A DNA stretch of 64,000 bases from Magallana gigas. Its lineage: Eukaryota. The stretch is taken from assembly GCF_963853765.1 (NCBI RefSeq), contig NC_088854.1, forward strand, positions 23,560,001-23,624,000, written 5' to 3'. The position numbers and the translations under genes were made by a program. This document shows positions 3,898 to 64,000 of this stretch, in pieces. Under the pieces are notes generated by a model. It saw only the letters and a program-made list of their open reading frames with translations, did not search any database and was not told where the DNA came from. Each line of letters opens with the position of its first letter. Positions within the stretch are counted from its first letter, which is position 1.

Positions 3898-5748
3898 CTG
3901 TTAGCAGTGTAGTATAGCATCAAGTTTACCAAAGACTTCATCATAACAAGACAGACTAATGCTTTGACCCAGCCCTCTGCCTGGGCATTAAATTATTCTC
4001 TGAACAATCATTAACAACAAAGATTGGTATCCCTATTAAATAAATGAGATTTTTATACTTTTATGTCAGTGCTTTTCATTGAAATCCATGTTGTGATCAA
4101 TTTGAAAAATGTGCTTTAAAGAAAACTGGTATTTTTACATATATATGAAGATTAAATGCTAGAGAAGTTGCCATATATGTATGTACTTATAGAAACCCAT
4201 GCTATCATGTATGAAAAGATGATGTCACACACAGTGTAATTGATAGTGTTGGTGCACCTTTTCATTTTGCAGCATTTCATTGTGATCTGAGAACTGAGTT
4301 AGCTCTTTTATACATGTATTTGATTTTATTGCACTACTGTCTACCTGTATTTGTATCAGCTATAGAGAGTTTATTTATTGTTGAAAATTGATTTTTACAT
4401 GTATACCAAGAATACAAATAATTTTACTAGTCATGGGTGTTGTTATCTTATGAATTAGTTTATGAGAGTTTTATAAAATCTTCATATCCATTTGACGAAT
4501 ATAGATTTACTAATTACCGGTAAATTACCAGAAAATACTAGCGCATGCATTGTTCAGATATATTTTTATAGAAATCCTACAAATGTATATTACTATTTGA
4601 TAGAAAATAAAGCTAATCAACTTCTCTACATTTAAAAAATATTTTTATTGAGTTAATTAGGTTTAAAATTGCATATTCAAAGATTATTTCAAATATCATA
4701 ACTTTACCATGCGTTATGAGTCAAAATTTGGCAGACTTTGGCTTTCAACTTTGACTATATAAGTGTTTTGTTTTTTGTCCTTTGTGGTATTTACATTTCT
4801 AGTGTTTGCGATAACACTACGAATCAAAATTGTAACGCTAAGTTCAATACATTGAGGTATAGAATAGGGTACTTTTTATATCCCATAACCAGGCACTATA
4901 ACCAGGATGTGCGCATGCGTGAACCAACTTTCCATCGGGATCGGTAAAATATTGGGAGGAAATTCGAAAGCTATTTGGAGGAACTTCGAACTGATATATG
5001 TGCAATTTAAAAATGCGATTTTTATATGAAAAATATGATTAGAAGTGATAAAAATGTTATGTACATTAGATTTTACACCAAAAAATTAAATAAATAATTG
5101 AGAGAACAATCAAAATCAATGTTACAGGAAAACAACAGGCACTTAGCATCGGAGGGGGGGGGGGGGTTGGAATGGGGGCAGGGACAGGGGGACGGGACTG
5201 CCCCCCTCCAGCACACGTTTTCTCGCAGCAAATATTTTTCTTGAATTTACTTATAAAAAAGTAAATTAACATACAGTTGCACCCCCCCCCCAATGTTTTT
5301 GGGACCATGTAAAATTTGAAATGAAAGAGAGGAAATAAACTGTGAAATTGAAGTTAAAGGTACACTTAACCCCCTACCCCCACGGATTAGGATTTTCAAT
5401 TATTTAAAAAGTATTTTTGAGTTGTTGTTTTTTTCAAGGCAAGATTGGATTAGTCTGCCCTCAACCCACTTTGCTACGATGCTAGGTGCCAGAACAAAAT
5501 ATCATGGTTTCATTACATACATGTATGCTAGTATAAAGACTTTATGTAAACCAATATTATCTCGTGCATTGTTCCATTCACCAGGTTCTACAAACACCTT
5601 AGTCCAAAATAAATAAAAAATGCAAGACTAGGAGGGGAAGAAAGAAGAAATCTATTTTCCTTTTTTTTTTTACTCAGGAGCTATTTTGTTGGGGGGGGGG
5701 TATTAGGGGTGAACAGGTCACTGACCCCTTGTAGATCTACCCATGACC

Positions 5749-8471
5749 TATCACCAGGGTCTGTATACACATAACCAGGGTCAGTATACCCATCATCATG
5801 GTCTCCAGGGTCAGAGTACGTATCACCAGAGTCTGTGTGCCCATCACCAGAGTCTGTACACCCATAACCAGGGCTAGTATACCCATCACCAGGGTCTCCA
5901 TACCTATCACCAGGGTCAGAGTACGTATCACCAGAGTCTGTGTGCCCATCACCAGAGTCTGTACACCCATAACCAGGGTTAGTATACCCATCACCAGGGT
6001 CTCCATACCTATCACCAGGGTCAGAGAACGTATCACCAGAGTCTGTGTGCCCATCACCAGGGTCTGTACACCCATAACCAGGGCCAGTTTACCCATCACA
6101 GGGTCTCCATACCTATCACCAGGGTCAGAGTACGTATCACCAGAGTCTGTGTGCCCTTCACCAGAGTCTGTACACCCATAACCAGGGCCAGTATACCCAT
6201 CACCAGGGTCTTCATACCTATCACCAGGGTCAGAGTACGTATCACCAGAGTCTGTGTGCCCATCACCAGGGTCTGTATACCCATAACAGGGCCAGTATAC
6301 CCATCACCAGGGTCTCCATACCTATCACCAGGGTCAGAGTACGTGTCACCAGAGTTTGTGTGCCCATCACCAGGGTCTGGATACCCATAACCAGGGCCAG
6401 TATACCCATCACCAGGGTCTCCATACCTATCACCAGGGTCAGAGTACGTATCACCGGAGTCTGTGTGCCCATCACCAGAGTCTGTACACCCATAACCAGG
6501 GCCAGTATACCCATCACCAGGGTCTCCATACCTATCACCAGGGTCAGAGTACGTGTCACCAGAGTTTGTGTGCCCATCACCAGGGTCTGGATACCCATAA
6601 CCAGGGTCAGTATACCCATCACCAGGGTCTCCATACCTATCACCAGGGTCAGAGTACGTATCACCAGAGTCTGTGTGCCAATCACCAGGGTCTGGATACC
6701 CATAACCAGGGCCAGTATACCAATCACCAGGGTCTTCATACCTATCACCAGGGTCAGAGTACGTATCACTAGAGTCTGTGTGCCCTTCACCAGAGTCTGT
6801 ACACCCATAACCAGGGCCAGTATACCCATCACCAGGGTCTTCATACCTATCACCAGGGTCAGAGTACGTATTACCAAAGTCTGTGTGCCCATCACCAGGG
6901 TCTTTATACCCATAACAGGGCCAGTATACCCATCACCAGGGTCTCCATACCTATCACCAGGGTCAGAGTACGTATCACCAGAGTCTGTGTGCCCTTCACC
7001 AGAGTCTGTACACCCATAACCAGGGCCAGTATACCCATCACCAGGGTCTTCATACCTATCACCAGGGTCAGAGTACGTGTCACCAGAGTTTGTGTGCCCA
7101 TCACCAGGGTCTGGATACCCATAACCAGGGCCAGTATACCCATCACCAGGGTCTCCATACCTATCACCAGGGTCAGAGTACGTATCACCAGAGTCTGTGT
7201 GCCCATCACCAGGGTATGTATACCCATAACCAGGGTCAGTATACCCATCACCAGGGTCTCCATACCTATCACCAGGGTCAGAGTACGTATCACCAGAGTC
7301 TGTGTGCCAATCACCAGGGTCTGTATACCCATAACAGGGTCTCCATACCTATCACCAGGGTCAGAGTACGTATCACCAGAGTCTGTGTGCCCATCACCAG
7401 GGTCTGTATACCCATAACCAGGGCCAGTATACCCATCACCAGGGTCTCCATACCTATCACCAGGGTCAGAGTACGTATCACCAGAGTCTGTGTGCCCATC
7501 ACCAGGGTCTGTATACCCATAACCAGGGCCAGTATACCAATCACCAGGGTCTCCATACCTATCACCAGGGTCAGAGTAGGTATCACCAGAGTCTGTGTGT
7601 CCTTCACCAGAGTCTGTACACCCATAACCAGGGCCAGTATACCCATCACCAGGGTCTTCATACCTTTCACCAGGGTCAGAGTACGTATCACCAGAGTCTG
7701 TGTGCCCATCACCAGGGTCTGCATACCCATAACCAGGGTCAGTATACCCATCGTCAGGGTCTCCATACCTATCACCAGGGTCAGAGTACGTATCACCAGA
7801 GTCTGTGTGCCCATCACCAGAGTCTGTACACCCATAACCAGGGCCATTATGCCCATCACCAGGGTCTAAATACTTATCACCAGGAATAGTTTACGAATCA
7901 ATAGGGTCTGTGTGCCCATCATTAGGGTCAGTATATCTATCACAACAGTCAGTGCACTTATCATCAGGGTTTGTACATCCATTACCTTGATCAGTAGACT
8001 TTCACCAAGATAACTGTACCTATTACCTATCACCAGAGTTAGTTTACCTAACGGCCGTGTCAGTGTACGCATCCGTGGGTCTGAGGCCCCATCTCCAAGG
8101 TCAGTATACCTATCACAAGAGTCAGTACATTTATCACCAGTATATCTATCACATTCTCTATCACCAGGGTCAGTATACCTATCGACAGAGTCAGTGTACG
8201 TATCACAAGGGTCTGTAGCCAATCACAGGGGTCAGTATGTATCCATCACCAGAGTCGGTATACACAAAAGTGTAGATATTATAAGGTCAGCATACGTAAC
8301 ACCAGAATCTCAAAATCTATAACCAGGGTAAGTATAACCATCACCTGAGTCAGTATACCTATCACAAGGGTCATGAGTGTACGTATCACCAAGGTATGTG
8401 TAATCTTCACCAGGATCAGTATACCTATCACCAGGGTCACTCTACTTATCAACAGGGTCAGTATTACCTGA
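5749..8471 (+). repeat. Left-arm satellite: 105-bp unit made of five 21-bp subunits, degenerating toward the centre
   Basis: Unit ataaccagggccagtataccc-atcaccagggtctccatacct-atcaccagggtcagagtacgt-atcaccagagtctgtgtgccc-atcaccagagtctgtacaccc. Homogeneous to ~7866, degenerate 7866-8471. Confidence 0.95.
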
Positions 8472-8472
8472 C

Positions 8473-11400
8473 TCAGGTAATGGATATACAAACCCTAATG
8501 ATAAGTGCACGGACTGTTGTGTTAGATATACTGACCCTGGTGATGGGCACACAGACCCTATTGATGCGTACACTATCCTGTTGAAAAATATTAAGACCCT
8601 GGTGAGGGGTAAACTGACCTTTGTTATGAATATACAGACCATGATGATGGGCACACAGACCCTAGTACTACGAACACTGACCCTACTAAAAGATATAATG
8701 ACCCAGGTAATATGTTTACAGTTCTGGTGATACGTACTCTGACTCTGGTGATAGGCATTATGACCCTGGTGATAGGTATTGAGACCCTGGTGATGGGTAT
8801 ACTGACTTTGGCTACGGATGTACAGACCCTGGTCATGAGCACACAGACTCTGGTGAGACGTACTCTGACCCTGGTGATAGGTATTGAGACCCTGGTGATG
8901 GGTATACTGACCCTGGTGATGGGTGTACATACCCTGGTGATGGGTATACTGACCCTGGTTATGGGTGTACATACCCTGGTGATGGGTATACTGGCCCTGG
9001 TTATGGGTGTACAGACTCTGGTGATACGCACTCTGATCCTGGTGATAGATATGAAGACCCTGGTGATGGGTATACTGACCCTGGTTATGGGTGTACACAC
9101 CCGGGTGATTGGTATACTGACCTTGGTGATGGGTGTACAGACCCCGTTGTTAGGCACACAAACTCTAGTGATGGATATAATGACCATGGTGATAGGTATG
9201 GAGACCCTGGTGATGGGTATACTGGCCCTGGTTATGGGTGTACAGACTCTGGTGATGGGCACACAAACTCTGGTGATACGTACTCTGACCCTGGTGATAG
9301 GTATGGAGACCCTGGTGATGGGTATACTGACCCTGATTACGGGTGTACAGACTCTGGTGATGGGCACACAGACTCTGGTGATACGTACTCTGACCCTGGT
9401 GATAGGTATGGAGACCCTGGTGATGGGTATACTGGCCCTGATTATGAGTATACAGACCCTGGTGATGGGCACACAGACTCTGGTGATACGTATTCTGACC
9501 CTGGTGATAGGTATGGAGACCCTGGTGATGGGTATACTGGCCCTGTTATGGGTGTACAGACTCTGGTGATGGGCACACAGACTCTGGTGATACGTACTCT
9601 GACCCTGGTGATAGGTATGGATACCCTGGTGAAGGGTAAACTGACCTTGGTTATGGGTGTACAGACTCTGGTGATGGGTACACAGATTCTGGTGAGACGT
9701 ACTCTGACCCTGGTGATAGGTATGGAGACCCTGGTGATGGGTATACTGGCCCTGGTTATGGGTGTACAGACTCTGGTGATGGGCACACAGACTCTGGTGA
9801 GACGTACTCTGACCCTGGTGATAGGTATGGAGACCCTGGTGATGGGTATACTGACCCTGGTTATGGGTGTACAGACTCTGGTGATGGGTACACAGATTCT
9901 GGTGAGACGTACTCTGACCCTGGTGATAGGTATGGAGACCCTGGTGATGGGTATACCGACCCTGGTTATGGGTGTACAGACTCTGGTGATGGGTACACAG
10001 TTTCTGGAGAGACGTACTCTGACCCTGGTGATAGGTATGGAGACCCTGGTGATGGGTATACTGGCCCTGGTTAAGGGTGTGCAGACTCTGGTGATGGGCA
10101 CACAGACTCTGGTGATACGTACTTTAACCCTGGTGATAGGTATGGAGACCCTGGTGATGGGTGTACTGGCCCTGATTATGAGTATACAGACCCTGGTTAT
10201 GGGCACACAAACTCTGGTGATACGTACTCTGACCCTGGTGATAGGTATGGAGACCCTGGTGATGGGTATACTGGCCCTGGTTAAGGGTGTACAGACTCTG
10301 GTGATGGGCACACAGATTCTGGTGATACGTACTCTGACCCTGGTGATAGGTATGGAGACCCTGGTGATGGGTATACTGGCCCTGATTATGAGTATACAGA
10401 CCCTGGTTATGGGCACACAAACTCTGGTGATACGTACTCTGACTCTGGTGATAGGTATGCAGACCCTGGTGATGGGTATACTGGCCGTGATTATGAGTAT
10501 ATAGACCCTGGTTATGGGCACACAAACTCTGGCGATACGTACTCTGACCCTGGTGATAGGTATGGAGACCCTGGTGATGGGTATACTGGCCCTGATTACG
10601 GGTGTACAGACTCTGGTGATGGGCACACAGACTCTGGTGATACGTATTCTGACCCTGGTGATAGGTATGGAGACCCTGGTGATGGGTATACTGGCCCTGT
10701 TATGGGTGTACAGACTCTGGTGATGGGCACACAGACTCTGGTGATACGTACTCTGACCCTGGTGATAGGTATGGATACCCTGGTGAAGGGTAAACTGACC
10801 TTGGTTATGGGTGTACAGACTCTGGTGATGGGTACACAGATTCTGGTGAGACGTACTCTGACCCTGGTGATAGGTATGGAGACCCTGGTGATGGGTATAC
10901 TGGCCCTGGTTATGGGTGTACAGACTCTGGTGATGGGCACACAGACTCTGGTGAGACGTACTCTGACCCTGGTGATAGGTATGGAGACCCTGGTGATGGG
11001 TATACTGACCCTGGTTATGGGTGTACAGACTCTGGTGATGGGTACACAGATTCTGGTGAGACGTACTCTGACCCTGGTGATAGGTATGGAGACCCTGGTG
11101 ATGGGTATACCGACCCTGGTTATGGGTGTACAGACTCTGGTGATGGGTACACAGTTTCTGGAAGGACGTACTCTGACCCTGGTGATAGGTATGGAGACCC
11201 TGGTGATGGGTATACTGGCCCTGGTTAAGGGTGTGCAGACTCTGGTGATGGGCACACAGACTCTGGTGATACGTACTTTAACCCTGGTGATAGGTATGGA
11301 GACCCTGGTGATGGGTGTACTGGCCCTGATTATGAGTATACAGACCCTGGTTATGGGCACACAAACTCTGGTGATACGTACTCTGACCCTGGTGATAGGT

Positions 11401-13428
11401 ATGGAGACCCTGGTGATGGGTATACTGGCCCTGGTTAAGGGTGTACAGACTCTGGTGATGGGCACACAGATTCTGGTGATACGTACTCTGACCCTGGTGA
11501 TAGGTATGGAGACCCTGGTGATGGGTATACTGGCCCTGATTATGAGTATACAGACCCTGGTTATGGGCACACAAACTCTGGTGATACGTACTCTGACTCT
11601 GGTGATAGGTATGCAGACCCTGGTGATGGGTATACTGGCCGTGATTATGAGTATATAGACCCTGGTTATGGGCACACAAACTCTGGCGATACGTACTCTG
11701 ACCCTGGTGATAGGTATGGAGACCCTGGTGATGGGTATACTGGCCCTGATTACGGGTGTACAGACTCTGGTGATGGGCACACAGACTCTGGTGATACGTA
11801 CTCTGACCCAGGTGATAGGTATGGAGACCCAGGTGATGGGTATACTGACCCTGGTTATGGGTGTACAGACTCTGGTGATGGGCACACAGATTCTGGTGAG
11901 ACGTACTCTGACCCTGGTGATAGGTATGGAGACCCTGGTGATGGGTATACTGGCCCTGTTATGTGTGTACAGACTCTGGTGATGGGTACACAGACTCTGG
12001 TGATACGTACTCTGACCCTGGTGATAGGTATGGAGACCCTGGTGAAGGGTAAACTGACCTTGGTTATGGGTGTACAGACTCTGGTGATGGGTACACAGAT
12101 TCTGGTGAGACGTACTCTGACCCTGGTGATAGGTATGGAGACCCTGGTGATGGGTATACTGGCCCTTGTTATGGGTGTACAGACTCTGGTGATGGGCACA
12201 CAGACTCTGGTGAGACGTACTCTGACCCTGGTGATAGGTATGGAGACCTTGGTGATGGGTATACTGACCCTGGTTATGGGTGTACATACTCTGGTGATGG
12301 GTACACAGATTCTGGTGAGACGTACTCTGACCCTGGTGATAGGTATGGAGACCCTGGTGATGGGTATACTGACCCTGGTTATGGGTGTACAGACTCTGGT
12401 GATGGGTACACAGTTTCTGGTGAGACGTACTCTGACCCTGGTGATAGGTATGGAGACCCTGGTGATGGGTATACTGACCCTGGTTATGGGTGTACAGACT
12501 CTGGTGATGGGTACACAGTTTCTGGTGAGACGTACTCTGACCCTGGTGATAGGTATGTAGACCCTGGTGATGGGTATACTGGCCCTGGTTATGGGTGTAC
12601 AGACTCTGGTGATGGGCACACAGACTCTGGTGATACGTACTCTGACCCTGGTGATAGGTATGGAGACCCTGGTGATGGGTATACTGACCATGATTATGAG
12701 TATACAGACCCTGGTTATGGGCACACAAACTCTGGTGATACGTACTCTGACCCTGGTGATAGATATGGAGACCCTGGTGATGGGTATACTGGCCGTGATT
12801 ATGAGTATACAGACCCTGGTTATGGGCACACAAACTCTGGTGATACGTACTCTGACCCTGGTGATAGGTATGGAGACCCTGGTGATGGGTATACTGGCCC
12901 TGATTCCGGGTGTACAGACTCTGGTGATGGGCACACAGACTCTGGTGATACGTACTCTGACCCTGGTGATAGGTAATGGAGACCCTGGTGATGGGTATAC
13001 TGACCCTGGTTATGGGTGTACAGACTCTGGTGATACGTACTCTGACCCTGGTGATAGGTATGGAGACCCTGGTGATGGGTATACTGACCCTGTTATGGGT
13101 GTACAGACTCTGGTGATGGGTACACAGATTCTGGTGAGACGTACTCTGACCCTGGTGATAGGTATGGAGACCCTGGTGATGGGTATACTGGCCCTGGTTA
13201 TGGGTAAACAGACAATGGTGATGGGCACACAAACTCTGGTGATACGTACTCTGACCCTGGTGATAGGTATGAAGACCCTGGTGATGGTTATACTGACCCT
13301 GGTTATGGGTGTACAGACTCTGGTGATGGGCACACAGACTCTGGTGATACGTACTCTGACCCTGAAGACCATGGTGATGGGTATACTGACCCTGGTTATG
13401 TGTATACAGACCCTGGTGATAGGTCATG
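8473..13428 (-). repeat. Right-arm satellite: same 105-bp (5x21) unit, inverted, with a 1154-bp higher-order duplication
   Basis: Reverse complement of the left array. ORFs 9548..10504 and 10702..11658 are nearly identical at offset 1154. Confidence 0.95.
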
Positions 13429-15030
13429 GGTAGATCTACAAGGGGTCAGTGACCTGTTCACCCCTAATACCCCCCCCCCCCCCCAACAAAATAGCTCCTG
13501 AGTAAAAAAAAAAGGAAAATGGATTTCTCCTTTCTTCCCCTCCTAGTCTTGGATTTTTTTATTTATTTTGGACTAAGGTGTTTGTAGAACCTGGTGAATG
13601 GAACAATGCACGAGATAATATTGGTTTACATAAAGTCTTTATACTAGCATACATGTATGTAATGAAACCATGATATTTTGTTCAGGCACCTAGCATCGTA
13701 GCAAAGTGGGTTGAGGGCAAACTCATCCAATCTTGCCTTGAAAAAAACCCCAACTCAAAAATACTTTTTAAATAATTGAAAATCCTAATCCGTGGGGGTA
13801 GGGGGCCAAGTGTACCTTTAACTTCAATTTCACAGTTTATTTCCTCTCTTTCATTTCAAATTTTACATGGTCCCAAAAACATTGGGGGGGGGGGGTGAAA
13901 CTGTATGTTAATTTACTTTTTTATAACCATTCCAACCCCCCCCCCCCCCCCCCCCCCCCGATGCTAAGTGCCTGTTGTTTTCCTGTAACATTGATTTTGA
14001 TTGTTCTCTCAATTATTTATTTAATTTTTTGGTGTAAAATCTAATGTACATAACATTTTTATCACTTCTGATCATATTTTTCATATAAAAATCGCATTTT
14101 TAAATTGCACATATATCAGTTCGAAGTTCCTCCAAATAGCTTTCGAATTTCCTCCCAATCGTTTACCGATCCCGATGGAAAGTCGGTTCACGCATGCGCA
14201 CATCCTGGTTATAGTGCCTGGTTATGGGATATAAAAAATACCCTATTCTATACCTCATACATTCCATCAATGGCGGAAATGACGTACTGTTGGTTTATAA
14301 GCGGAGGTTTGCATACGTAATTATGCAAAATGAAAATAACGTCAAATGTCAATACATGTAATTAAAATTATCTTATCGTGCAATTACCGAAATAAGGAAT
14401 CATTACCTAGGTGTAAATTCTCACAAAGGTTTAAGATTTTGAATGCCATGGGCTGTTTCTTAAAGAACGCGACGGTCAAATTTATGATGGCATAATCAAC
14501 CCACCAATTTTGGAATGTTCGTTTTGGGTTTTTTTTTTATTTTGGCCACAGATACAGATCATTCTCAATCCGATGAATATAATTTATATTTTCACGATTT
14601 TTAAAACTATGATTAACAACTCCCAACTATAGTTAACGAAATTCAAAATAAACAATACTCTACAGATGTGGATCTATTTTTAATAAATACGTTTATCTTC
14701 AGACAAATAAATTTGATTAGCACTGTTTAACTAAATGGCTTACAGCCATTAAACTTGTGTATGAGTTTACAGTGAAATAAATGGTTAACAAATCGTTAAC
14801 TTTAGTTCCGATTCGTAAACTATAGTTTATAGTCGATAAACTTAGTTTATCAACTATTATTTAAAACTATGTTTGGCTCATTTATATGAATTTGGCGCAC
14901 CATTAATATGATATGATACCGGGTTGATTCGCACTGCCGTTTCAAACTACATACAGTTCGGTGAAAAACAAGGAACAACATATGTGCAATTCAAAAATTT
15001 ACTTGTAAATAAAAAAAAAAGCAGAAACGT

Positions 15031-29197: not shown

Positions 29198-30448
29198 CTA
29201 ACTAAAACAAAACATTGATTTAATCTCGTTTCGCAGTTTTTTGATACGAGAACAATATATAATAGGATTTAGAAGAGAGTTCAAATTGGCTGCAGCAAAA
29301 GAGCCAACAATGACGGACTGTGGACTGGAAAACATAAGGGAGACAATCATAGGACTTGAAAATAAAAACAGAGCCGCTAGGATCATGCTCACTAGTTTCA
29401 TGGACTTCATTATCCTCTTATTCCTCTTGTCCTCCAACTTTCTTGAATCGGAAGGTAATGTCATATTCGTGTAACGTTTTATCACTCGGTGGATTGCCAG
29501 AAAATAGAAAATCAAGGTTAGCAAAAGGAAGATGATTCCGAAAACACATATAGTGAAACGAACAACGAGGATGTGTTGGCCGTATACTGTCTTGTAGAAA
29601 CAGTGTGTGTAGTCGCCTTCTGGGGAAACGGTGGAGGAGTACAGAATGAAGAACGTCATCCATCCACCTATGTAGAGGTAATACTTCCGATTGTCGTCAA
29701 ACAAGCGACCCGCCCAGGAACTCTCGGAGAGAACGAGATATCGGTGGAGACTAATACAAAATGTTTGATAGAGTGACATTATCAAACTTGAAATAAATAC
29801 GACATTCACTACAATACACCAGCCTAACATCGTAGTTAGTGTGGGGAACAAAAGCCGAAACCCAATCATCAACATACTCAAACCCATCAGGAAGTCGCTG
29901 GAAGATAGTCCCAAGACAAGGTTGTAATTAGTATTCTCTCGTAACTTTCGGTTCCTCACGGACGCCGCTATCACCAAAATGTTTATCATTATGACAGCAA
30001 AGCCAACAATGACAGCAAACACAGATATTATTCGCGGGAAAGAAGAGGACTCGTTTGAGGAACTATTCCCCTGAAGAGGTGTCGAATTGAAGGATGAAAT
30101 CGTTTCCCCGGTTGTGTATTGTAAAAAGAACGATGAAGAAGTCGATGATTCGGAGAAAGTCGAGTCTGGTTCAGGAAAAACCCGCGATTTAGTGGAACTA
30201 TTGCAAAGGTCGGTGCTGTTAAAAGGCGTGGTGGTTATAGTTTTCTGAGTGTTTGTGGTACTCGGCTCCGACAAGTCCGTGACTGATTCTTGTGGCCACG
30301 GACGGGAGTCGGTCAGGGTTTGGTTTTGTGCTCCAGTGGTTGTTATTAGAGACGTTACAGGTGTTGATTCTTCTGTGTAAATGACAGAGAACAGCGAGCA
30401 CATTAAGAAGACTATCTTAAAAGTGTTCTCCTGGAATGCTTTTGCCAT
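29198..30448 (-). CDS. Intronless rhodopsin-like (class A) GPCR with signal peptide and Ser/Thr-rich ectodomain
   Basis: Open frame from ATG 30448 (MAKAFQENTFKIVFLMCSLFSVIYT). Seven hydrophobic segments, N1.50 (INILV), D2.50 (SDFLMG), HRY at the DRY position, NPIIY in TM7. Confidence 0.92.
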   Translation of the reverse strand: MAKAFQENTFKIVFLMCSLFSVIYTEESTPVTSLITTTGAQNQTLTDSRPWPQESVTDLSEPSTTNTQKTITTTPFNSTDLCNSSTKSRVFPEPDSTFSESSTSSSFFLQYTTGETISSFNSTPLQGNSSSNESSSFPRIISVFAVIVGFAVIMINILVIAASVRNRKLRENTNYNLVLGLSSSDFLMGLSMLMIGFRLLFPTLTTMLGWCIVVNVVFISSLIMSLYQTFCISLHRYLVLSESSWAGRLFDDNRKYYLYIGGWMTFFILYSSTVSPEGDYTHCFYKTVYGQHILVVRFTICVFGIIFLLLTLIFYFLAIHRVIKRYTNMTLPSDSRKLEDKRNKRIMKSMKLVSMILAALFLFSSPMIVSLMFSSPQSVIVGSFAAANLNSLLNPIIYCSRIKKLRNEIKSMFCFS

Positions 30449-30739
30449 CGCGTGGATCGTCTTTCGTCGATGAAATGGAATGACCCTTTGCTGCATTAAA
30501 AAAAAAATGTTTTCACCTTTTTTTTATTTCAATATTTGATAGATACCTGGTATATATCTATCATAAAAAATAACCATACATGTTATATGATCTCTGTTTT
30601 GGGGTACAAATTTTAAAAAATGCCATCTTTAGAGATAGAATTGGTTCTACTGTACAGTAAACCTTTGATGTTTATTTAACCTTAAAATAACTTTTGCTTT
30701 TATCTGACATGAAAATATCATGCATAATGGATTATATAA

Positions 30740-32483: not shown

Positions 32484-33781
32484 GTATTACGTATACATAT
32501 ATGTATAGCCCTGACTTTTTATCTCAGAATTTAAAGGATTCATACTCCTAAAATAATTATGATCTATCTATGAATGAAGTTTGCATGTACAGTATCAGGC
32601 ATTCGGTGAATTCTACTATTTGCGCACACATTACGATTCGCACTACTTTGTTAACTATGCAGTGACAGCTTTGTGTAAATTAAAAATTTCATATTCATAT
32701 AAAATTTTTCTTGAGATTTAAACTTTTATACAGTGACATAATTATTCAATCATACTTAAATGCTTAAAATATTTAATCGGGAAGTTACTATAAAAGTAAA
32801 GTTAAGTTACTTGTGTATTCTGAAAACAACATAACATTGCAAATTATGCTATTTGATGCATGTTGTAGTTTCGGCATAACATTAACTTATTTCATAATAC
32901 TGAAACCGAGCGCAGCGAGAGGGGGGCGAAGCCCGCCTCGCGAAGCGAGGATTAATGGTAACACGTATATATAAAAAAAATCAGTGAAAAATGAAAGTTG
33001 AATCAGGGGTACTAAGGCCAAAAAAAAATTCTTCCAGCCCTGGGTGCCGCCATCTTGGCAGCCATTTTGTTTTTAAAAAGTTAGTTCGATCATTGATTTA
33101 TCAGTACTTATCGATGTTTGTTGCCCCTAAACTCGATTAAATAAGTTCCAGTGTTTCAATAGAAGGTAATTCGAATTAAAAGAAATTAAAAAGGAAACCA
33201 GATAGTTTTCAATAGTGCTTCAATCAAGAAACACGACATGTTCTATGTATGTGTTATCAAATTATCAGATGGAAAATAAAAACATTAAGGTCAAGGAACT
33301 GATCTTTTAGAAGCCGAATAAAGTATTTAATTTTATTACAGCGGCATTCATATGAATTAAATTGATAAACAATGAAAGAAGAAATAAAAAAATAGTTCGG
33401 AATAACGTTACTCTCTTCGGCTATTTCCGAAGACAAAACTTGAACGTTTTACGTCTGAAATATGACGTCACAATGTTGATTGAGCACGCGACGTTTAGTA
33501 AAACTTTGGCTAATGATTTGAGTAGGCAACCAGGCGGATCCTACTGTGTGCGTTTCAAATAAATTTTATTTTACAAAAATCAAACTGCACTGTGTTAAAT
33601 CTGCGCTCGGTCCAACGGTCACACCGTTTACATATTAGTTCATATCACATGCCAATCATTTTTTAAAAGGAATACTTTGTTTCTACTGTTTACCGACAAC
33701 TTTACAATTACAGCGCCTTTAAACTTATGTGTGCATATGGCACGGAATCCCGATCCCGATTCAGATAAACGTGTGCTAGCC

Positions 33782-34389
33782 TAGTCTCGTTCAACCAGAC
33801 GCTCGGCTGTCTCCGTAAATCTCCGACGAGCAGAGAGTCTGGTAAAGCGTCACGTTATTGTTTGTAACGCCAAAACGAGGCTTACCAAAATCCTGGTATT
33901 GAATTTGATTGGTTGAAAGAAACACACCTCCTATAACATGTAAACAATGACAGAAGCAAACGATTTTGCCGTTTAAACTGAAAGATCTACGACTGGAAAG
34001 TTTAAAAACGGTTATAAATGGAAATGATTTATTTGCAGTGTTACCATACGGGATAGGGTAAAACCAATAATTAATCTATTTTAAAGCTGTCAAGGTTGTA
34101 AACAAACATTCACCGCTTCGTCGAACTTAAGTTCAGCCATGTTTAATGAGTCTATGGAAAGCGAGACTATAGTATAAGACTAAATTGACGTAAGTTCCAT
34201 AATTTTCACGGCAAGAAAATAAAAATCTGTATATCACACATATCTTTAACCGGCACACATTGACAACGATTCAAAATGAAACTAAATCAGCGCCCCCTAT
34301 CGGTAGCGGTTATCAACGTGACGCTTTACCAGACTCTCTGCTCGTCGGAGATTTACGGAGACAGCCGAGCGTCTGGTTGAACGAGACTA
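33782..34389. mobile_element. MITE with perfect 75-bp TIRs and 9-bp TSD (AcademH-like termini)
   Basis: TIR 33782-33856 is the exact reverse complement of 34315-34389 (TAGTCTCGTTCAACCAGACG...). GTGCTAGCC flanks both ends. Confidence 0.85.
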
Positions 34390-35181
34390 GTGCTAGCCTG
34401 GTTCCCTGAGCTACCCATTACGCACAGGAACAAGGCTAGCTCATGCGCAGGCTGAATTTTCCCCATAGCATCCGGTTTAACCTCGCTTATATATATTTTC
34501 TGCGTGGACCTCAGGATCCACGCAAAAATATCGACCAGTCAATATATTTTGGACGAGCTAATATTACAATTATTGACTATTCGTCTATATTATTACTTAT
34601 AAGGTTAGTTACTGACTCACTACGGAAATATATTGGGTTCCTCAATCTCATAGATGGCGAGGCGAAGTGTTTTGTTTTCCCGAGGACTATCAAGCGACAT
34701 ATTCATTCACAAATAGTGGTGATCTACGCAAAGCCATGTACAAGATGCCTTACATCTCGTCCAATTAAACTTATTAAAACTCTTTAAAAGTATCAATACC
34801 ACCTTTCAAAGACGCTTTAAAAATCTTCGCTTCACCCATATTAATTATAATTCAATTTTAAACCTCCGCAAATTTCGACGCTGCCATTTTGTTCTGCTCC
34901 AGACACAACAATGTGACGTCAATATTCAAAGGGCAACTACTCTCATTTAAAAATAATTCCAAAGGGCAACTACTCTAAATATTTTAAGGACTATTTTCGC
35001 GGCGGAGAGTTGGTGCGAGTTGGCATTTACATTCGCCGCGCTATTACTTAAACAATAAAATGCTTTCTTTGGTGATTCATTTGGGATAAGAAGGTTGCGA
35101 CATTGCAAAAATCAAAGTACTGAAGTACTGAAAGCCGGGCTCTTTTGGTGTGTCTTTATGCATATTGTGGAGTAAAGACTG

Positions 35182-35997: not shown

Positions 35998-36835
35998 AAC
36001 AAGAATAGAATTCCTGGGTCCCCCGCCGGTCAAGCAGTATACTAGTATCAAGTTTATCGACCAAGGCTGATTTAGGAACTTGACCAAGGTATTAGTGGTA
36101 TAAACATTTGGTATAAATTTAATGAAAATCCGTCAAAATTTGTAGACATGAGAGCGCTTACAAGGTCAACTTTTGGATAAAACGGAGTCATTATTATGGT
36201 CAAAGTCCCATAACTCCAACAAAAAGTATCGACCAATGCTGATTTACGAACTTGACCAAAGTATTAGTGGTATAAACATTTGGTATAAATTTAATGAAAA
36301 TCCGTCAAAATGTGTAGGCATGAGAGCGCTTACAAGGTCAATTTTTGGATAAAACGGAGTCATTATTGTGGTCAAAGTCCCATAACTCCAACAAAAAGTA
36401 TCGACCAATGCTGATTTCCGAACTTGACCAAAGTATTAGTGGTATAAACATTTGGTACATGTATAAATTTAATGAAAATCCGTCAAAATTTGTAGGCATG
36501 AGAGCGCTTACAAGGTCAATTTTTGGATAAAACAGAGTCATTATTGTGGTCAAAGTCCCATAACTCGAGCAAAAAGTATCGACCAATGCTGATTTGCGAA
36601 CTTGACCAAGGTAATAGTGGTATAAACATTTGGTATAAATTTAATGAAAATCCGTCAAAATTTGTAGGCATGAGAGCGCTTACAAAAAAGTGTGACGGAC
36701 GGACGCACGGACACACGGACGCACGGACACACGGACCCACGGACACACAGACCCATGGACACACGGACCCATGGACACACGGACGGACGCCCGGCATTTC
36801 TATGTCCCCGCACCGCGTTGCAGCGGGGGACAAAA
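35998..36835 (+). mobile_element. Helentron/HINE (pearl-like) element with ~172-bp internal tandem repeats
   Basis: aacttgacc recurs at 36077, 36249, 36421 and 36599. An (ACGG)-type microsatellite follows at ~36695-36790, then a terminal hairpin ccccgc..gcgggg and an A tract. Confidence 0.8.
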
Positions 36836-63552: not shown

Positions 63553-64000
63553 TTTTTAACCGGGTTTTCCAACGGAAAAATCCGGTTATTAAAATGGTGA
63601 AAATGGCGGGCGGCTGCCAAAAGGGTACCCTCATTGTACGGATAACTCCTCCTACAGTTTTCAAGATAGGAAGTTGTTCTTTTGCAGATCGATTGTACAT
63701 ATATCAGAGGTGTGCATATTGCTAGGATTTTGATTTCTGATTATTTATGAAAAAAATACCAGCTTTTGAACTTAGTCATTTTTTGGCAAAAAATTGCATA
63801 TAGGATACCCTCATTGTATGGATAACTCCTCCTACAGTTTTCAAGATAGGAAGTTGTTCTTTTGCAGATCAATTGTACATATATCAGAGGTGTGCATATT
63901 GCTAGGATTTAGATTTCCGATAATTTATGAAAAAAATACCAGCTTTTGAACTTAGTCATTTTTTGGCAAAATATTGCATATAGGGTACCCTCATTGTACG
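63553..64000 (-). mobile_element. Second copy of the 180-bp-repeat HINE family, cut by the window end
   Basis: aaccgggttttccaacggaaaaatccggttattaaaatggtgaaaatggcgggcggc is the reverse complement of 48450-48512, followed by 180-bp units. Confidence 0.85.

What the first reader, a model, noticed from the sequence alone, without database searches (positions are those of the whole stretch)
4847..14263. 9.4-kb foldback DNA element whose arms are mostly satellite, with GAGG...CCTC ends and a 7-bp TSD
Seen: the whole element is one inverted repeat. Each arm is ~0.85-0.9 kb of unique sequence followed by a 105-bp satellite (2.7 kb left, 5 kb right), and there is no transposase. ATACATT is duplicated exactly at both flanks; it can also be read as a 5-bp TACAT with TG..CA ends. 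Known: foldback elements with tandem repeats in long TIRs exist (Drosophila FB, Galileo, Tetris; sea-urchin TU). Galileo/P elements have 7-bp TSDs but CA..TG ends, MULE-type foldbacks have ~9-bp TSDs, and Sola elements start with GAG but make 4-bp TSDs. Inference: this end/TSD combination fits none cleanly. It may be an unclassified satellite-carrying transposon family, distinct from the Helentrons that usually carry oyster satellites.
Basis: partly seen in the sequence, partly recalled or inferred. Interest (0 to 1): 0.85.

Follow-up and report, generated by a model that had tools for sequence, protein, structure and literature searches.

The report
Oyster foldback transposon carrying CgiSat33
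This 9.4-kb stretch is a real hairpin-shaped ("foldback") DNA transposon of the Pacific oyster with no gene of its own. About 30 young copies carry the published satellite CgiSat33, which had no known link to a mobile element, but the enzyme that moves them is still unidentified.

Summary
Window 4854-14256 is one inverted repeat with GAGG...CCTC ends, flanked by the direct repeat ATACATT. Each arm has 0.83-0.89 kb of unique sequence followed by a 105-bp (5 x 21 bp) satellite, 2.7 kb on the left and 5 kb on the right.

- **Family:** it has about 63 termini in this 564-Mb genome. About 25 are clean inverted pairs 7-14 kb apart, and the arms are about 98% alike.
- **Target-site duplication:** all 10 pairs with two intact ends have a perfect 7-bp duplication. 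The 5-bp TG..CA reading is rejected.
- **Not an artefact:** the fold point is conserved in copies on other chromosomes.
- **Satellite:** it is CgiSat33 of Crassostrea gigas (94-97.5% to the published consensus). All 100 listed exact satellite hits lie inside family members.
- **Likely polymorphic:** contigs from three other sequencing studies leave the element exactly at the junction, which suggests empty-site alleles.
- **No transposase inside:** the superfamily is unresolved. The 7-bp duplication fits the P superfamily, and intact P-like transposase genes exist in this genome. The ends and target motif do not fit Galileo, and MULE-type foldbacks make 8-10 bp duplications.

It is a new member of a known kind (FB, Galileo, Tetris). 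This scan already found another copy of the same family (s1-366383).

The parts
4847..4853 (.). Left copy of the 7-bp target-site duplication, ATACATT
   Evidence: Ten pairs in the family have perfect 7-bp TSDs. Contigs of runs X15, X3 and X6 stop matching exactly at 4853.
4854..5742 (+). Left unique arm (terminal domain). It starts GAGGTATAGAATAGGGTAC and holds two ATAACCAGG motifs at arm positions 31-39 and 44-52, plus a degenerate satellite unit at about arm 713-742.
   Evidence: 46 genome matches, 40 of them near full length at 96-98% identity. The terminus is sharply defined in 30 loci. The arm-to-satellite boundary is the same in 31 arms.
5743..7943 (+). Left CgiSat33 array: 105-bp higher-order unit made of five 21-bp subunits, about 21 units
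   Evidence: Identity to the published CgiSat33 consensus is 95-97.5%.
7944..8800 (.). Centre: degenerate satellite units (74-80% to consensus), with the strand switch at about 8465-8533 and no unique spacer
   Evidence: It aligns end to end (84-85% over about 885 nt) with the centres of independent copies L035, L044 and L045, across their own strand-switch points.
8801..13424 (-). Right CgiSat33 array, about 44 units, with internal 1.15-1.26-kb duplications that make it longer than the left array
13425..14256 (-). Right unique arm, the inverted copy of the left arm (97.0% alike, with a ~76-bp deletion and poly-G length differences)
14257..14263 (.). Right copy of the 7-bp target-site duplication, ATACATT

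Best explanation
This is one copy of a young, non-autonomous foldback DNA transposon family of the Pacific oyster.

**Structure.** Each element is a pair of long terminal inverted repeats with nothing between them. An arm has a ~0.9-kb terminal domain that starts GAGGTATAGAATAGG, followed by a tandem array of a 21-bp motif organised as the 105-bp unit published as satellite CgiSat33.

**Movement.** It moves by cut-and-paste. A transposase supplied in trans, not yet identified, binds the ends and inserts the element with 7-bp staggered cuts. There is a weak preference for C two bases outside the duplication.

**Origin of the satellite.** It most likely arose by tandem multiplication of a subterminal motif (core CCCATAACCAGG) and may act as extra transposase-binding sites, as in Galileo and Tetris. 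Array length then drifts by unequal exchange, which explains why the two arms differ (2.7 vs 5 kb) and why copies range from 7 to 14 kb.

**Shown here:** the structure, copy number, 7-bp TSD, conserved fold point, satellite identity, the satellite's confinement to these elements in the sample listed, and the absence of coding capacity.

**Inferred:** trans-mobilisation, the binding-site role of the repeats, the growth mechanism, and the present-day insertion polymorphism.
For: - **Structure:**
- **Family size:** 63 termini within 2 mismatches of a 40-mer, against 0 for the reversed control. They form about 25 inverted pairs 7.1-14 kb apart on 9 of the 10 large contigs (one search adds further pairs). 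Arms average 98.0% identity, and two arms on different chromosomes are 99.9% alike.
- **TSD:** perfect 7-bp duplications in 10 of 10 pairs with intact ends. These include three copies of a diverged subfamily and one nested insertion.
- **Target preference:** C at position -9 in 22 of 35 ends, against a 23% background.
- **Fold point:** conserved among copies.
- **Satellite identity and location:** the satellite equals the CgiSat33 consensus. It occurs 1410 times genome-wide as a 43-mer within 3 mismatches. All 100 listed places lie inside family members, + strand in the left half and - strand in the right half.
- **Motif link:** a 12-nt core is shared between arm positions 29-40 and a satellite subunit; 1 of 1000 shuffles reached that score.
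- **Polymorphism:** contigs of three other studies match the left flank up to exactly 4853, then continue for 158-1093 nt that do not match the element.
- **Precedent:** repeat-borne binding sites and the origin of repeats from the TIR are described in PMC4079207.
Against: - No autonomous relative with the same ends was found. No other family shares 18 or more of the 21 terminal bases above the background of the reversed control.
- None of the 81 MULE-domain hits lies inside an element.
- None of the places listed for the 21-base terminal pattern (up to 3 mismatches) lies near a P-like transposase hit.
- The loose letters at 4853 were not displayed, so the empty-site reading is not proven.
- Only contigs were available, so no long read spanning the element was seen.
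- Repbase and Dfam could not be searched.
Confidence: 0.9

Rival explanations
1. The family is a non-autonomous member of the P superfamily, a Galileo-like foldback moved by a THAP9/P-type transposase encoded elsewhere in the oyster genome.
For: The 7-bp TSD is the Galileo value (PMC4168063). Galileo also has long, internally repetitive TIRs that carry extra transposase-binding sites (PMC4079207). The genome has 25 matches to TNP-like_RNaseH_N; four score identically, three of them with 780-aa open frames and one with 619 aa, which suggests a young P-like family.
Against: The target sites show no GTANTAC palindrome. From my own knowledge, the ends start GAGG rather than the CA... typical of P, 1360 and Galileo. 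None of the places listed for the 21-base terminal pattern (up to 3 mismatches) lies near a P-like ORF. The short P HTH model gave no hit, though that search also rang in no control genome.
Confidence: 0.3
2. The family is a Mutator/MULE-type foldback, like Drosophila FB, Tetris or nematode Tm1, moved by a MULE transposase.
For: Most foldback elements have been assigned to Mutator (PMC4079207). From my own knowledge, G-rich GAG/GGG termini are typical of MULEs. The genome has 81 MULE-domain matches, many in long open frames.
Against: The TSD is 7 bp in 10 of 10 pairs, while Tetris makes 8-10 bp and, from my own knowledge, MULEs usually make 8-11 bp. No MULE hit lies inside or beside an element.
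Confidence: 0.2
3. The driver belongs to another or an undescribed cut-and-paste lineage that makes 7-bp TSDs. One candidate is the intact autonomous element with a 7-bp TSD that another reader of this scan noted at about C2:43.61 Mb. In this reading the GAGG end was recruited from an internal site of an older element.
For: The combination of ends, TSD and target motif matches neither Galileo nor MULE foldbacks. In the older related family the motif GATGTATAGAATAGGCTA is internal, lies on one side only, and sits between two copies of the subterminal ~60 bp. This shows that the terminus has a history separate from the rest of the arm. Note s1-385461 is an unchecked lead.
Against: There is no sequence evidence linking any autonomous element to this family.
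Confidence: 0.4
4. It is an assembly or chimeric-read artefact, or a local inverted duplication of a satellite array that is not mobile.
For: Long palindromes of satellite DNA are a known failure mode of long-read assembly. No raw long reads were available here.
Against: About 25 loci on 9 of the 10 large contigs have the same architecture, each bounded by its own 7-bp duplication. The asymmetric centre is conserved at 84-85% across independent copies. Arm depth in four independent runs is tens of times the flank depth, starting exactly at 4854.
Confidence: 0.02

Closest known systems
Tetris, a foldback transposon of Drosophila virilis (PMC4079207)
   Same: It is transposase-less. Its TIRs have an outer unique domain followed by tandem repeats, and the repeats share a short stretch with the terminal domain. 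The repeats also count as a satellite of the genome, and its autonomous partner is unknown too.
   Different: Tetris makes 8-10 bp TSDs and was assigned to Mutator. Only three complete copies exist, and it has a non-repetitive middle domain. Here the TSD is 7 bp, there are about 25-30 complete young copies, there is no middle domain, and in the sample listed the satellite lies only inside the elements.
Galileo (P superfamily) of Drosophila (PMC4168063, PMC3688188)
   Same: It makes 7-bp TSDs. Its TIRs are long and internally repetitive, resembling foldback elements, and the repeats are thought to add transposase-binding sites.
   Different: Galileo has autonomous copies that encode a THAP/P transposase, and its target consensus is GTANTAC. 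Here no coding copy was found, the ends are GAGG..., and the target shows only a C two bases outside the TSD.
Drosophila FB and sea-urchin TU elements
   Same: They are classic foldbacks whose arms are mostly short tandem repeats, and most copies are non-coding.
   Different: From my own knowledge, FB makes 9-bp TSDs and TU 8-bp TSDs, with different ends. This comparison was not tested here.
Helentron-associated elements (Cg_HINE) that carry most dispersed oyster satellites (PMC7492417)
   Same: Short-to-medium satellite arrays are spread over many chromosomes by a non-autonomous DNA element in the same species.
   Different: Helentrons use rolling-circle transposition and have no TSD and no long TIRs; their repeats sit in one orientation between conserved flanks. 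This family has TIRs, a 7-bp TSD and mirrored arrays.
CgiSat33 satellite of Crassostrea gigas (PMC8268682)
   Same: It has the same 105-bp monomer, 94-97.5% identical to the published consensus. It has the same scattered distribution, on 9 of 10 chromosomes.
   Different: The paper lists it with no TE relationship. Here it is the inner part of a transposon's inverted repeats.

Membership tests
Foldback transposons (structural class) | Long terminal inverted repeats make up most or all of the element | tested here: met
   The arms run 4854-~8465 and ~8465-14256 and the centre has no unique spacer.
Foldback transposons (structural class) | Tandem repeats inside the inverted repeats | tested here: met
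   There are 105-bp / 21-bp arrays in both arms, in mirrored orientation.
Foldback transposons (structural class) | Dispersed copies, each flanked by a target-site duplication of constant length | tested here: met
   About 25 inverted pairs were found. Ten of 10 pairs with intact ends have perfect 7-bp TSDs.
P superfamily (Galileo-like) | 7-8 bp TSD | tested here: met
   The TSD is 7 bp in all pairs. The Galileo value comes from PMC4168063.
P superfamily (Galileo-like) | Palindromic target consensus GTANTAC | tested here: not met
   No position within the TSD exceeds 0.17 bits. The only signal is C at -9.
P superfamily (Galileo-like) | An autonomous relative with the same ends that encodes a THAP/P-type transposase | tested here: inconclusive
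   P-like RNase H domains are present at 25 places. None of the places listed for the terminal pattern lies near them.
Mutator/MULE foldbacks (FB, Tetris, Tm1) | TSD of 8-10 bp or longer | tested here: not met
   The TSD is 7 bp in 10 of 10 pairs. Tetris makes 8-10 bp.
Mutator/MULE foldbacks (FB, Tetris, Tm1) | An autonomous relative that encodes a MULE transposase | tested here: inconclusive
   There are 81 MULE-domain hits, none within any element interval. The ends of those MULEs were not readable.
Helitron/Helentron carriers of oyster satellites | No TSD, no long TIRs, repeats in a single orientation | tested here: not met
   This element has a TSD, 4-5-kb inverted arms and mirrored arrays.
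CgiSat33 satellite | 105-bp monomer matching the published consensus | tested here: met
   The consensus from Data S1 of PMC8268682 matches the arrays at 94-97.5%.
Any Repbase/Dfam family | Sequence match of the 0.9-kb arm to a curated consensus | not testable with these tools
   Neither library is available. The 2021 satellitome paper found no Repbase match for the satellite part.

The most novel reading that the evidence does not exclude
The family is driven by a cut-and-paste transposase lineage not yet described for foldback elements: 7-bp TSD, GAGG ends, and a C-N-[7 bp]-N-G target. Its terminus was recruited from an internal site of an older long-TIR element. CgiSat33 is then a multimerised transposase-binding site whose copy number evolves under selection for mobility. 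That would make it a tractable, currently active model of a satellite being born and spread by a transposon outside insects.
Probability: 0.2. Interest if true: 0.65.

Novelty: new member of a known kind. Interest (0 to 1): 0.45.

Why it matters
Oysters are used as a model for how satellite DNA becomes scattered instead of forming heterochromatin blocks, and so far that pattern has been credited mostly to Helentrons. This family shows a second route. A whole catalogued satellite, CgiSat33, appears to exist only as the inverted-repeat filling of a young foldback transposon that is probably still polymorphic. Long perfect palindromes of this kind are also hot spots for inversions, deletions and assembly errors, so their positions are useful for oyster genomics. 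The step from a related older element with short 21-bp arrays to kilobase arrays with a 105-bp higher-order unit is visible within one genome.

Tried and rejected
- **5-bp TSD with TG..CA ends:** rejected, because the base next to GAGG varies and TSDs such as AGCTACG, TTCTTTG and GAATACA do not fit.
- **Autonomous partner by terminal sequence:** 21-mers with up to 3 mismatches found only this family, a diverged subfamily and an older family. The rest was at the level of the reversed control.
- **ORFs next to an old-family terminus in L043:** these turned out to be a reverse transcriptase/RNase H of an unrelated retroelement.
- **Transposase domains inside elements:** MULE none inside; P HTH no hit anywhere; P-like RNase H hits only elsewhere.
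- **Fetching more genome DNA:** I wanted the left part of the old family, the P-like elements and the 7-bp-TSD element at about C2:43.61 Mb.
- **Empty-site allele:** two small flank ORFs were not on record as genes. The 23-nt empty-site junction gave no match in metagenome contigs, which proves nothing.
- **Supplements of the 2024 five-oyster satellitome paper:** not held.
- **Marzo et al. 2008:** not held.
Full report
**1. What is in the window**

Reading both ends directly gives, on the left...gttca ATACATT GAGGTATAGAATAGGGTAC.... On the right it gives the exact mirror...CCTC ATACATT ccatc....

- The element is 4854-14256 and the 7-bp direct repeats are 4847-4853 and 14257-14263.
- The outer 0.83-0.89 kb of each arm is unique sequence. 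The two copies are 97.0% alike, and the right one lacks about 76 bp.
- Inside, Tandem Repeats Finder finds a 105-bp unit with a 21-bp sub-period, on the + strand from 5753 and on the - strand up to 13424.
- GC skew changes sign at about 8.5 kb, and inverted pairs of up to 1071 nt are reported.
- Mapping the published monomer along the element shows 94-97.5% identity in the outer parts of both arrays. A degenerate stretch (74-80%) runs from 7950 to 8800, and the strand switch lies near 8465 within it.
- There is no unique spacer. Every ORF of 100 aa or more is a read-through of the repeat.

**2. It is a family, and the 7-bp duplication is real**

The window lies at C2:23560001-23624000 of a 564-Mb genome.

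- The 887-bp arm has 46 matches, 40 of them near full length at 96-98% identity.
- A 40-mer of the terminus with up to 2 mismatches occurs 63 times, against 0 for the reversed control. Most hits fall into inverted pairs 7.1-14 kb apart, about 25 pairs on 9 of the 10 large contigs. There is also a rearranged cluster at C8:46.96-47.27 Mb, and adds more pairs.
- In all 30 fetched loci the similarity starts exactly at GAGG.
- Both ends were available for ten elements with intact ends, and all ten have a perfect 7-bp duplication: ATACATT, AGCTACG, TTCTTTG, AACTGTT, GAATACA, ATGGACG, CACTTTG (a nested insertion), and ACTACTT, GATGAGG, TCACGTT in a diverged subfamily.
- An eleventh pair (L017/L026) has a damaged end reading TAGG. 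A twelfth (L025/L019) lies in the rearranged C8 cluster and does not match.
- The duplicated 7 bp carry no consensus. However, C is found two bases outside it at 22 of 35 ends against a 23% background. Because both ends are read inward, the target is C-N-[7 bp]-N-G.

**3. Not an artefact**

Besides the recurrence with private duplications, the asymmetric centre of this copy (7950-8800) aligns end to end at 84-85% with the centres of three independent copies. The alignment crosses their own strand-switch points. The fold point is therefore inherited.

Four independent sequencing runs show flank depth of 13-40, rising to hundreds or thousands exactly at 4854.

**4. Probably polymorphic**

In three runs from three other studies, a contig matches the left flank up to exactly 4853 and then continues for 184, 158 and 1093 letters that do not fit the element (X15, X3 and X6, table 8).

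A contig entering a 60-copy repeat would either match it or stop. The simplest reading is an empty site joined to the right flank.

The loose letters were not shown, and I had only one laying call, so this remains an inference.

Arms of different elements reach 99.9% identity (L018 on C2 vs L029 on C8), which also points to very recent movement.

**5. The satellite is CgiSat33**

The 105-bp consensus printed in Data S1 of the C. gigas satellitome paper (PMC8268682) is the same repeat. That paper lists CgiSat33 as 105 bp, 0.05% of the genome, present on 9 of 10 chromosomes, and without any TE match. No other held paper mentions it.

A 43-mer of the monomer with up to 3 mismatches occurs 1410 times in this genome. 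All 100 listed places lie inside elements of this family, with + strand hits in the left half and - strand hits in the right half. This agrees with an earlier report of this scan on another copy (s1-366383), which I have thus partly re-tested.

**6. Where the satellite comes from**

The five 21-bp subunits share the pattern GTATACCC-ATCACCAGGGTCT.

- The terminal domain carries CCCATAACCAGG at arm positions 29-40, identical to the core of one subunit on the same strand. A second ATAACCAGG follows 13 bases later, and a degenerate unit sits at about arm 713-742. One of 1000 shuffles reached each score.
- This is the same relation reported for Tetris, where a 37-bp stretch is shared between terminal domain and repeat. 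In Galileo the repeats carry extra transposase-binding sites (PMC4079207).
- The diverged subfamily has 21-bp arrays without the 105-bp unit. An older family has only 0.4-0.5 kb of loosely 21-bp repeats per side. Array growth and the higher-order unit are therefore recent.

**7. The older relative**

Thirteen loci picked up by the variant terminus GATGTATAGAATAGGCTA turned out to be a different, larger element.

- A small foldback core is 75-80% similar to our arm from position 21 onward.
- It lies inside about 1.5 kb of further inverted sequence on each side.
- The right end is ...GGGCTTCCGTA.
- In the one copy with both ends in hand, the duplication is 6 bp, GAAAAG.
- The GATG motif is internal, present on the left side only, and sits between two copies of the ~60-bp subterminal segment.

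The terminus of the young family thus has a history separate from the rest of the arm. Either a GAGG-ended element once inserted into the older one and recombined with it, or the end was recruited from this internal site. I cannot tell which.

**8. Who moves it**

Nothing in the element codes for a protein.

- No other family shares the terminal 21 bases above background.
- None of 81 MULE-domain matches lies in an element.
- The short P-element HTH model found nothing, but it also rang in no control genome.
- The P-superfamily RNase H model found 25 places. Four score identically, three of them with 780-aa open frames and one with 619 aa. A young P-like family therefore exists, and P/Galileo is the superfamily known for 7-bp duplications.
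- Against a P driver, the target is not GTANTAC and, from my own knowledge, P-type ends start CA.
- Against a MULE driver, the duplication is 7 bp and not 8-10.
- Another reader of this scan noted an intact autonomous transposon with a 7-bp duplication at about C2:43.61 Mb (s1-385461).

My odds are P-like 0.3, MULE 0.2, and other or undescribed 0.4.

**9. Verdict**

The interpretation as a mobile, satellite-carrying foldback family distinct from Helentrons is supported. The claim that it fits no known superfamily is open.

The kind of element is well known (FB, TU, Galileo, Tetris). New points are the host phylum, the number of young complete copies, the link to a catalogued satellite that had no TE assignment, and the combination of ends, duplication and target. 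The same family was already reported by this scan from another window.

Noticed in passing
L031-L043 (e.g. L038:646-6417; L031:1-3277): An older, larger long-TIR element of about 6 kb contains a 75-80% diverged version of the foldback core. Its own ends are TACGGAAGCCC...GGGCTTCCGTA, and the one copy with both ends has a 6-bp duplication (GAAAAG). The motif GATGTATAGAATAGGCTA is internal to it, on the left side only.
   Followed up: partly
L008, L011, L012 (C8:46.967, 47.002, 47.068 Mb): Elements of the family are nested in each other's arm at the same site (arm position ~613-620, TSD CACTTTG) twice over. The whole structure is then repeated three times about 35 and 66 kb apart. This indicates a local segmental duplication within a 300-kb cluster of family members.
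   Followed up: partly
L031:222-815 and window 33781-33840 / 34331-34390: Most old-family copies carry a ~600-bp insert just after the GATG motif. A 60-bp piece of it occurs as an inverted pair 490 bp apart in the window, so it is probably a separate small inverted-repeat element.
   Followed up: no
window 36055-36685, 47719-48439, 63622-64000: These are short arrays of 172-bp and 180-bp tandem repeats (3.6, 4 and at least 2 units, 94-95% matches). The last one looks like the inverse of the second. They are of the size typical of Helentron-borne oyster satellites.
   Followed up: no
window 29198-30496 (-): An intronless 432-aa open frame has a rhodopsin-family 7TM receptor domain (Pfam 7tm_1, E 5e-18).
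   Followed up: partly
G000 C1:69612243, C7:38112875, C8:37956065, C9:20231602: Four identically scoring P-superfamily (TNP-like RNase H) matches on four chromosomes, three with 780-aa open frames and one with 619 aa. This looks like a young, possibly active P-like transposon family in the oyster.
   Followed up: no
L043:1003-3694: A retroelement fragment (reverse transcriptase and RNase H matches) lies directly beside an old-family terminus.
   Followed up: partly
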